A DNA stretch of 42,144 nt from Fonticula alba ATCC 38817 (GCA_000388065.2 KB932203.1); one strand, 5' to 3'. Positions 6,289 to 8,216 are shown, counted from the stretch's first letter. The notes: generated from the sequence alone by a model not told the origin. Made by a program: numbers and translations.

Positions 6289-8216
6289 CTAGGTGGAGCC
6301 CTTGGTGTTGCGGATCATCTTGGCCATGTAGTCCCACTCGGCCTCGGTGACCTGCACGAGCTCGTTGAACTCGCCGGACATGAAGGCAGTCTCGCCACCG
6401 TCAAAGTTGAACACCTGGAGCCGGAAGTGCGGCCAACACGAAAGCGCCAGCAAGGTCAGCGAATTCCGAAAGGCCGGCAAGAGGTGAAAGAAAATAAACC
6501 CCGCCCCCATGATTCCATCCCCCCTCCCCGCCTTCTTCGCCGTACCTGGCCGGTGATCCAGGAGGCATAGTCGCTGGTGAGATAGGTGGCGAAGTTGGAC
6601 AGCTCCGGGACCTCGCCGAAGCGGCCGGTCGGCAGCCGGTCGATCATGAGCTTGCGGAACTTGCCGGTCGGGTCGAGGCGGCTGAAGGCCCCCTTGGTCT
6701 CAATCGGACCCGGGGCAATGCCGACAAAGCGGAAACCATAGCGGCCCCACTCCGAGGCCAGCGACCGGATGAGGGCGTTGACACCGGCCTTGGCCGCGGC
6801 CGAGGGAGCCACAAACCCGGACCCCAGGTCGGCGTAGGTGGTGGAGATGCAGAGGACATTGGCCGAGCGGCCGGCCTTCAGAAGGCGCTTGCCGGCCTCG
6901 AGGCTACGCCAGCGCGGCGGAAGGGAGAGACCCCGGACAACGGGCAACCGGGCAGGCCAGCGGCCAGGCATGGGCGGTTAGTCTGGCAGCGCGTGGGAGG
7001 GGCAAGGGCAAGGCCCGGCCGAGGGGCAGGAGGAAGACGCACGTCACGTAGGCTGTGCCATTGAGGACGATGTCGGTGATGGACTTCCAGCCATTCGGCG
7101 AGAGGCGCTCGAAGGGGGAGATGAAGTTCCCGGCACTTGAGAGGGACAGAGAAGCGAGGAAGAGGGGCCTGTGTCAGCATTCGGCAGATGGCGCCATCCA
7201 AGCGGCAGAGGGGGGAGGGGAGGGGGAGCGCGGAAAAGACGGTGGCGAGGCAGGCGCATGAAGAGCCGGAGGAAGAACGCACGCGTTGTTGACAATCACA
7301 TCTGGGAGACCGGCCGCCTGCTCGCAGGCGTCCAGGGCCTTGGACACGGACTCCGGATCGCGCACATCGCACGAGGCGAAGTACACCGGGTTGCCAGTCT
7401 GCGCGGAGATCTCCTCGGCCGTGGCCTGGAGAACCTCCTGCGTCCGGCTGACAATGAAGACCGTGGCCCCGAGCTCGGAATAGCGGGTGGCCATGCCCTT
7501 GCCGAGCCCGGTACCGCCGCCGGTAATGAAGACCACCTTCCCGCGGTACGAGTCAGCCGGAAGCAGGGCCGTCAGCTTCGGCTGGAAGCTGGCCTGGGCC
7601 ACTGCCGAGACGCCGGAGTCGGAGGTGGCCGCGGCGGCAGCCGGCGCGACGGCCGTCAGCTCCGAGATGTACAGGCGCATGGCCTCCTCGCGGGAGGTGC
7701 CCTTCAAGGAGTTCCAGGCGTCCCACTTGTAGCGGCCAGCGAGATCAAACATGCCCGGGCGGTCTGCCAAGCAGATTCATCAGCCGAGGGGCGACGGGGG
7801 AAGCCAGGCGAGGATGCGCAGGAGTGAGCGAGGGTGGAGAAAGGTGGGCCAGGGTGAGCCAGACTGGACGATGCCGGACGAGGGGGAACCAGTGGGGGGG
7901 GGGGGGGCGGGTCGAGCAATCGAGATACACACACACACGCCCACACACACGCCCAACGGGTGTAGCAGGAACAGAGCGCCATGTCAGACATACCAGTGGC
8001 CACATCGCCCTCCTTGGCTTGCTTGAAGAGGGAGTAAAAGCGCAGCTTCTTGTCATTGTCCATGGACAGGATGGCCGATGCCTGATCAGCCACGGTCTGC
8101 TCGAACTTGGCCAACAGCTCGGCCCCGGAGAGCTGGGTCGAGAAGGCCCGGCGGCCGGTGCTGGCAGCAGACTGGAGGAGGCGCGCAGCTGCGCTTGGGG
8201 CAATGCGGGAAAGCAT
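6289..8216 (-). CDS. DECR1: Fusion: mitochondrial presequence + acyl-CoA-binding (ACBP) domain + mitochondrial-type 2,4-dienoyl-CoA reductase (exons 8216-7994, 7763-7283, 7135-7043, 6903-6546, 6414-6289)
   Basis: ACB motifs [47 protein letters not shown]1 motifs [62 protein letters not shown]-terminus [27 protein letters not shown] is Arg/Ser/Ala-rich with no acidic residues. All introns are GT-AG and in phase. Confidence 0.93.

What the first reader, a model, noticed from the sequence alone, without database searches (positions are those of the whole stretch)
6289..8216. Acyl-CoA-binding domain fused to mitochondrial 2,4-dienoyl-CoA reductase
Seen: one gene encodes presequence - ACBP domain - Ala/Ser linker - complete DECR1. 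The C-terminal half of the ACB domain and the DECR Rossmann motif lie in the same exon (7763-7283) with no stop, so this is not a gene-merging artefact. The ligand-binding Tyr/Lys positions (FYSLFKQ, KWDAW, AMRLY) look intact. Established: animal DECR1 and yeast Sps19 are stand-alone SDRs, whereas the next auxiliary beta-oxidation enzyme, ECI2, is the known ACB-fused one. Inference: this may be an independent recruitment of an acyl-CoA capture/channelling module onto the reductase step of unsaturated fatty-acid breakdown. I do not know of a described ACB-DECR architecture.
Basis: partly seen in the sequence, partly recalled or inferred. Interest (0 to 1): 0.8.

Follow-up and report, generated by a model that had tools for sequence, protein, structure and literature searches.

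The report
Acyl-CoA-binding domain fused to dienoyl-CoA reductase
This Fonticula alba gene really does make one spliced mRNA encoding a fatty-acyl-CoA-binding domain joined to the mitochondrial 2,4-dienoyl-CoA reductase. The same fusion occurs in amoebae, marine algae and many environmental eukaryotes, so it is an old, widespread and apparently undescribed enzyme form, not a one-off invention.

Summary
A five-exon minus-strand gene (CDS 8216-6289) encodes 426 aa: a basic presequence, a complete ACBP domain (PF00887, 92.5 bits), a disordered Ala/Ser linker of about 20-40 residues, and a DECR1-type reductase about 61% identical to mammalian DECR1. The second half of the ACB domain and the Rossmann motif share exon 7763-7283. 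One cDNA contig in each of two RNA runs covers the whole gene, with all four introns removed exactly as modelled.

The protein is identical to the public Fonticula alba entry named only "2,4-dienoyl-CoA reductase (NADPH2)".

About 60 database proteins carry the same architecture. Named sources are Stenamoeba, Vermistella, Triparma and Aureococcus; the rest are environmental eukaryotes, two of them with the fusion in a single uninterrupted ORF. Holozoans (animals, Amoebidium, Pigoraptor) and an oomycete lack the ACB part. The reductase tree suggests an old fusion with repeated losses, but this is not proven.

Seven full-text searches found no paper describing the fusion. A 2020 ACBD review treats ECI2 as the only ACB-enzyme fusion.

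The most likely function is a tethered acyl-CoA capture and hand-off module, as proposed for ECI2. This is inferred, not tested. I rate it a new variant of a known kind, of moderate interest.

The parts
8217..8244 (-). 5' UTR (minimum extent)
   Evidence: The cDNA contigs of runs X1 and X2 reach 8244 and 8238.
8136..8216 (-). Start codon and presumed mitochondrial presequence (aa 1-27)
   Evidence: The first 30 residues hold 4 Arg/Lys and no Asp/Glu. pLDDT is below 50 for residues 1-25. 27 of 28 aligned fusions have such a basic extension, acid-free or nearly so. Targeting itself is inferred.
7994..8216 (-). Exon 1: presequence plus the first half of the ACB domain (helices 1-2)
   Evidence: Pfam ACBP profile positions 2-39 match aa 36-73. 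Joint 7763|7994 is present in the cDNA contigs.
7764..7993 (-). Intron 1 (GT..AG, phase 1), which splits the ACB domain
   Evidence: skips 230, ends CT..AC on the + strand.
7283..7763 (-). Exon 2: second half of the ACB domain, linker and Rossmann fold, in one open frame
7660..8111 (-). ACB domain (aa 36-109, interrupted by intron 1)
   Evidence: PF00887 scores 92.5 bits. The AlphaFold model shows four helices, H31-49, H54-69, H82-92 and H99-113, with pLDDT 84-97. Human ACBP 2cb8 matches at E=5e-19.
7540..7659 (-). Ala/Ser-rich linker and N-terminal arm of the reductase (aa 110-149)
   Evidence: pLDDT is below 50 for residues 116-131. This stretch varies in length and is low in complexity across the 28 fusions, and is followed by the conserved PMLPPGTF-type motif.
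6292..7539 (-). DECR1-type SDR domain (aa 150-426, across exons 2-5)
   Evidence: adh_short_C2 scores 152.7 bits. It is 61-64% identical to 335-aa mammalian DECR1, with N238, Y289, S300 and K304 aligned to N148, Y199, S210 and K214. The best structural matches are 1w6u and 7ucw at about 60% identity.
7136..7282 (-). Intron 2
   Evidence: skips 147.
7043..7135 (-). Exon 3
6904..7042 (-). Intron 3
   Evidence: skips 139.
6546..6903 (-). Exon 4 (catalytic Tyr/Ser/Lys region)
6415..6545 (-). Intron 4
   Evidence: skips 131, cut +2.
6289..6414 (-). Exon 5 coding part with stop codon TAG at 6291-6289. The C-terminus is ...NTKGST, with no PTS1.
6072..6288 (-). 3' UTR (minimum extent)
   Evidence: The cDNA contig of X2 reaches 6072 and that of X1 reaches 6099.

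Best explanation
The locus is the Fonticula alba gene for a mitochondrial 2,4-dienoyl-CoA reductase (DECR1 orthologue). Its mature polypeptide carries a complete acyl-CoA-binding (ACB) four-helix domain at the N-terminus, joined by a flexible linker.

Shown here: the fused gene, the fused mRNA, intact ACB ligand residues, and intact DECR1 NADPH-binding and catalytic residues. Also shown: the same architecture occurs in several distant eukaryotic lineages.

Inferred mechanism: after import and removal of the presequence, the reductase assembles as the usual SDR tetramer. Each subunit then carries a tethered ACB domain. That domain binds medium- and long-chain acyl-CoA esters in the matrix and raises their local concentration at the reductase active sites, or hands them over directly. 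This would favour long-chain polyunsaturated substrates, as has been proposed for the ACB domain of animal ECI2.

Inferred history: the fusion is old and was lost several times, among others on the lineage leading to animals. There the ACB domain is found on the neighbouring auxiliary enzyme ECI2 instead.
For: Gene and transcript. My model is identical to the public Fonticula alba protein P0179.

Binding residues: Y61, K65, K87 and Y106 are invariant in 28 fusions and align with human ACBP.

Catalytic residues: N238, Y289, S300 and K304 align with N148, Y199, S210 and K214 of 335-aa mammalian DECR1 and are invariant in alignment A1.

Folds: the model shows two confidently folded domains separated by a disordered linker, and the best structural matches are DECR1 structures.

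Targeting: 27 of 28 fusions have a basic N-terminus with no or almost no acidic residues, and no C-terminus fits the PTS1 pattern.

Independent occurrences: the fusion sits in one uninterrupted ORF in L001 and in L005. Named taxa are Stenamoeba, Vermistella, Triparma and Aureococcus.

Precedent for the mechanism: ECI2 lacking its ACB domain is still active but less so, and channelling has been proposed (PMC7057175, citing Onwukwe et al. 2015).

History: fused rows are spread across the non-animal part of the reductase tree. Truly unfused rows cannot form one clade (p-AU 1e-8). ACB domains of the fusions forming one clade is not rejected (p-AU 0.27).
Against: No biochemical data exist for any member. 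Acyl-CoA binding, mitochondrial location, persistence of the fusion after import, and any kinetic effect are all untested.

The model's inter-domain geometry is uncertain (pTM 0.63, and no tetramer was modelled).

Even for ECI2 the role of the ACB domain is described as unresolved.

The tree is rooted on unfused sequences of unknown origin, and counts of changes cannot tell gains from losses. The ACB tree has only 89 columns and a poor outgroup. A single ancient origin is therefore plausible, not demonstrated.
Confidence: 0.6

Rival explanations
1. The ACB domain is a regulatory or buffering module rather than a substrate feeder. It would sense or sequester matrix long-chain acyl-CoA. That could protect the reductase from detergent-like or inhibitory acyl-CoA, tune its activity allosterically, or serve as a general matrix acyl-CoA reservoir that merely happens to be attached to an abundant enzyme.
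For: The ACBD review lists an independent reservoir or transporter role as an open alternative for the ACB domain of ECI2. The linker is long, disordered and variable in length, which argues against a fixed docking geometry. ACB domains are also fused to other enzyme types, such as alpha/beta hydrolases and a DECR2-type reductase, so the module is generic.
Against: The fusion partner is specifically a reductase of acyl-CoA esters, and a DECR2-type reductase has acquired the same module. That pattern suits a substrate-related role. The four ligand residues are invariant, but this fits both readings.
Confidence: 0.2
2. The gene encodes a polyprotein precursor. After import, a matrix protease cuts in the linker and releases a free mitochondrial ACBP and a conventional DECR1.
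For: The linker ends exactly where the mature animal DECR1 begins: the alignment with mammalian DECR1 starts at Fonticula residue 130-134, which corresponds to mammalian residue 39-44. The linker is disordered and accessible. Mitochondrial polyprotein precursors are known in fungi (Arg5,6; from general knowledge).
Against: The Fonticula linker (residues 110-134) has no arginine, and arginines are sparse in most aligned linkers. The usual matrix processing peptidase motif with Arg at -2/-3 is therefore mostly lacking. Nothing here tests processing.
Confidence: 0.1
3. The fusion is a lineage-specific, recent recruitment in Fonticula, or else the fusions in different lineages arose independently several times.
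For: Fonticula branches alone near the base of the reductase tree. The fusion state changes at least 5-6 times on that tree. A separate fusion of ACB to a DECR2-type reductase shows that such events can recur.
Against: The same order of parts recurs in Amoebozoa, ochrophytes and many environmental lineages: presequence, ACB, low-complexity linker, then a conserved PMLPPGTF-type arm. Fused ACB domains forming one clade is not rejected. Fonticula's ACB domain is nearest to those of amoebozoan-type fusions. Losing an N-terminal domain is mechanistically easier than repeatedly gaining the same one. A probable recent loss is visible between the syntenic loci L005 (fused) and L002 (unfused).
Confidence: 0.08
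4. The fusion is an assembly or annotation artefact that merges two neighbouring genes.
For: None found. Prokaryote-style gene callers do make the opposite error, splitting the fusion into two ORFs, as in L003/L004.
Against: Both domains lie in one exon with no stop. One cDNA contig in each of two runs spans the whole CDS. Uninterrupted fused ORFs occur in two other organisms.
Confidence: 0.02

Closest known systems
Mitochondrial 2,4-dienoyl-CoA reductase DECR1 (human 1W6U, mouse 7UCW)
   Same: The C-terminal 296 residues are 61-64% identical to mammalian DECR1. They share the TGGGTGLG Rossmann motif, N148/Y199/S210/K214 equivalents, the N-terminal PMLPP-type arm and a basic N-terminal presequence.
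   Different: Animal DECR1 goes straight from presequence to reductase. Here about 90 residues (ACB domain plus linker) are inserted between them. The size difference, 426 against 335 aa, equals this insert.
ACBD2/ECI2 (animal delta3,delta2-enoyl-CoA isomerase type 2)
   Same: An N-terminal ACB domain is fused to an auxiliary enzyme of unsaturated fatty-acid beta-oxidation. The ACB domain is dispensable for catalysis but proposed to channel acyl-CoA.
   Different: In ECI2 the catalytic domain has a crotonase fold, not an SDR fold. ECI2 carries a PTS1 and is peroxisomal or dually targeted, and its ACB fusion is reported only in metazoans. The present fusion is on the preceding enzyme of the pathway, has no PTS1, and is found outside animals.
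ACBP/DBI (ACBD1), e.g. human 2CB8, bovine 1ACA
   Same: A four-helix ACB fold with conserved Y28, K32, K54 and Y73 equivalents. The match to human ACBP has E=5e-19.
   Different: Canonical ACBP is a free cytosolic protein of about 87 residues. Here the domain lies behind a mitochondrial-type presequence and is covalently tethered to an enzyme. Position Y31 is Phe in Fonticula.
Peroxisomal 2,4-dienoyl-CoA reductase DECR2 / yeast Sps19
   Same: Same reaction and the same SDR superfamily.
   Different: The Fonticula protein is clearly of the DECR1 type: exon 2 scores E=3e-30 against DECR1 and 2e-08 against DECR2. A separate environmental protein, P0349, joins an ACB domain to a DECR2-type reductase ending in -SKM.

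Membership tests
ACBP domain family (Pfam PF00887) | Profile match above the curated threshold over the whole domain | tested here: met
   92.5 bits against a cut-off of 28.3, covering profile positions 2-75 of 76 at residues 36-109.
ACBP domain family (Pfam PF00887) | Four-helix up-down-down-up bundle | tested here: met
   The AlphaFold model has four helices, 31-49, 54-69, 82-92 and 99-113, with pLDDT 84-97. The bundle topology was not compared separately with a solved ACBP.
ACBP domain family (Pfam PF00887) | Ligand-contacting residues Tyr28, Lys32, Lys54 and Tyr73 (bovine/human numbering, from general knowledge of ACBP structures) | tested here: met
   Y61, K65, K87 and Y106 align to these positions in human ACBP and are invariant in 28 fusions.
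ACBP domain family (Pfam PF00887) | High-affinity binding of medium- and long-chain acyl-CoA | not testable with these tools
   Needs ITC or a Lipidex assay on recombinant domain.
DECR1 (mitochondrial 2,4-dienoyl-CoA reductase, SDR) | Closest solved and database relatives are DECR1 rather than DECR2 or other SDRs | tested here: met
   1w6u at E=3e-30 against 4fc6 at E=2e-08 for exon 2. Foldseek's top 11 hits are all DECR1 at 57-60% identity. 61-64% identity to mammalian DECR1 over 292-296 residues.
DECR1 (mitochondrial 2,4-dienoyl-CoA reductase, SDR) | NADPH-binding Rossmann motif and active-site Asn148, Tyr199, Ser210 and Lys214 (human numbering; roles from general knowledge of the 1W6U study) | tested here: met
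   TGGGTGLG at 155-162. N238, Y289, S300 and K304 align to those residues in three 335-aa mammalian DECR1 sequences and are invariant in A1.
DECR1 (mitochondrial 2,4-dienoyl-CoA reductase, SDR) | Mitochondrial matrix location through a cleavable presequence | tested here: inconclusive
   The N-terminus is basic, acid-free and disordered, and there is no PTS1. No targeting predictor or experiment was available.
DECR1 (mitochondrial 2,4-dienoyl-CoA reductase, SDR) | NADPH-dependent reduction of 2,4-dienoyl-CoA to 3-enoyl-CoA | not testable with these tools
   An enzyme assay is required.
ACBD2/ECI2 | N-terminal ACB domain fused to a beta-oxidation auxiliary enzyme | tested here: met
   Same order of parts. 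This is a resemblance in design only.
ACBD2/ECI2 | Crotonase-fold enoyl-CoA isomerase catalytic domain with a C-terminal PTS1 | tested here: not met
   The catalytic domain is an SDR and the C-terminus is -KGST. It is not a member of the ECI2 family.

The most novel reading that the evidence does not exclude
The ACB-DECR1 fusion is the ancestral eukaryotic form of the mitochondrial dienoyl-CoA reductase. It was lost at the base of Holozoa, and animals later placed an ACB domain on the adjacent enzyme, ECI2. An unrelated lineage placed one on the peroxisomal DECR2-type reductase. On this reading, the auxiliary pathway for polyunsaturated fatty acids repeatedly needs one enzyme-tethered acyl-CoA-binding module. 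That would be a general, testable design rule for handling long-chain polyunsaturated acyl-CoA inside organelles that otherwise lack a free ACBP.
Probability: 0.3. Interest if true: 0.65.

Novelty: new variant of a known kind. Interest (0 to 1): 0.45.

Why it matters
ACB domains fused to enzymes are thought to be rare. The main review of the family calls ECI2 the most uniquely extended member and notes that it is confined to animals (PMC7057175).

A second ACB-enzyme fusion on the very next enzyme of the same pathway changes that picture. It is phylogenetically broad and it is absent exactly where the ECI2 fusion exists. This gives an independent natural experiment on what a tethered ACB domain does, a question still unresolved for ECI2.

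It also suggests that the stand-alone DECR1 of animals may be a derived, trimmed form.

There is a practical point too. Public annotation ("2,4-dienoyl-CoA reductase", "hypothetical protein", "short chain dehydrogenase") hides the architecture, and prokaryote-style gene callers split it.

Tried and rejected
1. Gene-merging or assembly artefact: rejected. Both domains share one exon, one cDNA contig covers the CDS in each of two runs, and uninterrupted fused ORFs exist in L001 and L005.

2. Fonticula-specific invention: rejected.

3. The protein-atlas search on exon 2 returned only generic SDR fragments and was uninformative.

4. The search for homologous proteins restricted to residues 1-140 found only the protein itself and two ACB-hydrolase fusions. 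The ACB part shares too few exact words to recruit relatives.

5. Raw-read RNA runs X12 and X13 (labelled organism B) laid no reads at all, so they are no test.

6. The apparently unfused environmental sequences inside fused clades were examined individually.
   - P0197 is a caller-split fusion. An ACB ORF lies 20 bp upstream in another frame, and its own N-terminus still holds the last ACB helix.
   - P0198 and P0191 look N-terminally truncated and were set to unknown.
   - P0167 and Globisporangium P0248 have their own presequences and are truly unfused.

7. The first ACB-domain tree test was spoiled because I mislabelled three truncated fusions as 'other'. It was redone.

8. The neighbouring SDR gene (9339-10463, minus strand) was checked as a possible DECR paralogue. 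It is DHRS9-like and unrelated.

9. Long ORFs elsewhere in the window gave no Pfam hits. They are probably frame noise typical of GC-rich DNA.

10. I could not check whether Fonticula's own enoyl-CoA isomerase lacks an ACB domain.

Full report
**Observation**

Reading the minus strand of 5900-8700 and assembling exons by their GT..AG borders gives a five-exon gene: 8216-7994, 7763-7283, 7135-7043, 6903-6546 and 6414-6289. The CDS is 1281 nt and the protein 426 aa.

Exon 1 matches the first half of the Pfam ACBP profile. Exon 2 matches the second half (profile 42-75) at its residues 1-34 and adh_short from residue 75, with no stop in between. The same exon matches human DECR1 (1w6u) at E=3e-30 and human or bovine ACBP at about 1e-10. 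The full protein scores 92.5 bits on PF00887 (cut-off 28.3) and 152.7 bits on adh_short_C2.

**Transcript evidence**

Four small runs of 2012 from one organism hold 59-61% of the sampled words of 6200-8300, which is close to the exonic share. Laid on 5900-8700, runs X1 and X2 each give one contig (1499 and 1521 nt, depth 76, no mismatches). These contigs cover 6072/6099 to 8244 and skip exactly 6415-6545, 6904-7042, 7136-7282 and 7764-7993, with CT..AC ends on the plus strand. The ACB and reductase parts are therefore on one spliced mRNA.

The run type is only guessed as RNA by the tool, but intron-free contigs can hardly be anything else. Two raw-read runs under another organism label laid nothing and are no test.

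**Identity**

My model is letter-for-letter identical to database protein P0179, "2,4-dienoyl-CoA reductase (NADPH2) [Fonticula alba]". That protein lies on a 3.6-Mb contig and has PF00887 among its precomputed domains. The window is therefore Fonticula alba, a nucleariid-related amoeba in the sister lineage of fungi. The gene model is already public, but its name hides the ACB domain.

**Anatomy**

- Residues 1-27 are basic and free of acidic residues, and are disordered in the model.
- Residues 31-113 form four confident helices, the ACB domain.
- Residues 116-131 are disordered (Ala/Ser-rich).
- From about residue 133 the conserved N-terminal arm and the SDR domain follow.

The ACB ligand residues Y61, K65, K87 and Y106 align with Y28, K32, K54 and Y73 of human ACBP. 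They are invariant in an alignment of 28 full-length fusions (A1).

The reductase part is 61-64% identical to 335-aa mammalian DECR1. N238, Y289, S300 and K304 align with N148, Y199, S210 and K214 at a constant offset of 90, which is the length of the ACB insert. Foldseek's best matches are the DECR1 structures 1w6u and 7ucw.

The C-terminus (-KGST) is not a PTS1. The same holds for the other fusions, and 27 of 28 of them have a similar basic N-terminal extension. Mitochondrial targeting is thus a reasonable inference but not shown.

**Distribution**

An exhaustive HMMER search with exon 2 (which spans the junction) found many proteins aligned across both parts, at only 38-55% identity to the query. 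Word-indexed searches with one full-length hit, and then with the alignment A1, listed about 45 clusters carrying PF00887 plus the SDR families. In all, about 60 fetched sequences have both parts.

Named sources of the fusion:
- Stenamoeba stenopodia and Vermistella antarctica (Amoebozoa);
- Triparma verrucosa and T. strigata (Bolidophyceae; UniProt name "ACB domain-containing protein");
- Aureococcus anophagefferens (Pelagophyceae; named "hypothetical protein" or "short chain dehydrogenase").

The rest are environmental. In two metagenomic or assembled contigs the fusion is a single uninterrupted ORF: L001 3843-5237 and L005 3001-4629.

Stand-alone DECR1 occurs in all animals listed, in the holozoans Amoebidium and Pigoraptor, in the amoebozoan Soliformovum, and in the oomycete Globisporangium.

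**History**

A maximum-likelihood tree of the reductase domain (54 rows, 292 columns) places fused sequences throughout the non-animal part, with Fonticula alone near the base. Amoebozoan fusions fall in a starred clade together with the holozoan stand-alone enzymes. The ochrophyte fusions and most environmental ones fall in the other main clade.

Some "unfused" environmental rows turned out to be artefacts. P0197 has an ACB ORF 20 bp upstream in another frame and still begins with the last ACB helix. Others start at an internal Met.

After correction the tree needs 5-6 changes of state, and the truly unfused rows cannot be one clade (p-AU 1e-8). A likely recent change is visible between two syntenic loci (giant gene, DUF952, DECR). 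One is fused (L005). The other is unfused, with its own presequence and no ACB remnant (L002).

On the ACB-domain tree (89 columns, poor outgroup), the fused domains forming one clade is not rejected (p-AU 0.27). Fonticula's nearest ACB domains are those of amoebozoan-type fusions.

Parsimony cannot tell gains from losses. However, the same order of parts, the same junction and the ease of losing an N-terminal domain make one old fusion with several losses the better reading. I put this at roughly two to one over repeated independent fusions.

**Mechanism**

Nothing here tests function. The best-supported account is borrowed from ECI2. That animal enzyme also carries an N-terminal ACB domain; without it the enzyme still works but less well, and the domain is proposed to pass acyl-CoAs to the catalytic domain (PMC7057175).

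For the present protein I infer a reductase tetramer with four ACB domains on disordered tethers of about 20 residues. These would capture long-chain acyl-CoA in the matrix and raise its local concentration at the active sites.

There are three rivals. One is a buffering or regulatory role. Another is a polyprotein cut in the linker, which is made less likely by the lack of arginine in the Fonticula linker. The third is an artefact, which is excluded.

**Comparison with what is known**

The protein passes every sequence-level test for an ACB domain and for DECR1. It resembles ECI2 in design but is not a member of that family, because its catalytic domain is an SDR rather than a crotonase fold and it has no PTS1.

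Seven full-text searches found no paper describing an ACB-DECR or ACB-SDR fusion. [quoted passage not shown] Subscription-only papers are outside the searched library, so absence is not proven.

**Verdict**

This is a real, expressed fusion that is catalogued in databases and misleadingly named, but apparently not described in the literature. It is widespread among microbial eukaryotes rather than an isolated innovation. It is a new variant of a known kind (an ACB domain tethered to a beta-oxidation auxiliary enzyme), and of moderate interest. Its value lies mainly in two things: the complementary distribution with ECI2, and the possibility that animal DECR1 is the trimmed form.

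Noticed in passing
P0349 / P0076 (environmental proteins found; no window coordinates): The second half of an ACB domain (the protein is N-terminally incomplete) is followed by a DECR2-type, peroxisomal-type reductase (4fc6, E=3e-80) that ends in -SKM, a PTS1-like tripeptide. This looks like a separate fusion of an ACB domain to the other kind of dienoyl-CoA reductase.
   Followed up: partly
L005:2488-4629 and L002:3250-5029: Two related environmental contigs share the gene order giant protein, DUF952, DECR. 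L005 has the ACB-DECR fusion in one ORF. L002 has a stand-alone DECR with its own presequence and no ACB remnant upstream. This is a recent change of fusion state between close relatives.
   Followed up: partly
L003:3604-4981 and L004:3604-4981: The gene caller split an ACB ORF (125 aa) and a DECR ORF (326 aa) that lie 20 bp apart in different frames, probably across a short intron. The ACB match itself is interrupted by about 19 in-frame residues. Database proteins from such callers under-report the fusion.
   Followed up: partly
P0282, P0283: Proteins that combine an ACB domain with alpha/beta-hydrolase domains (one is named carboxylesterase). This is another ACB-enzyme fusion not covered by the ACBD review.
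   Followed up: no
P0001 (1045 aa), P0026 (797 aa), P0102 (585 aa): Proteins with 5-9 separate stretches matching the ACB half of the query. They appear to be tandem multi-ACB-domain proteins of unknown origin.
   Followed up: no
window 9339-10463, minus strand: The next gene upstream on the same strand is a DHRS9/retinol-dehydrogenase-like SDR (9b2f, E=4e-25). It has at least one intron and a hydrophobic N-terminus, and it is unrelated to DECR.
   Followed up: partly
window 5806-5960, 6000-6060, 7925-7975, 8225-8290, 8470-8500: (GT)n/(CA)n microsatellites and long poly-C/poly-G or CT-rich tracts lie in the introns, UTRs and intergenic DNA around the gene. The reads tool skipped 6012-6061 and 7882-7955 as repeats.
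   Followed up: no
window 35687-38683 (-), 32005-34122 (-), 15433-17427 (+), 24388-26376 (+): Very long ORFs (660-998 aa) have no Pfam match. In DNA with 63% G+C many of these may be chance open frames or low-complexity proteins.
   Followed up: no
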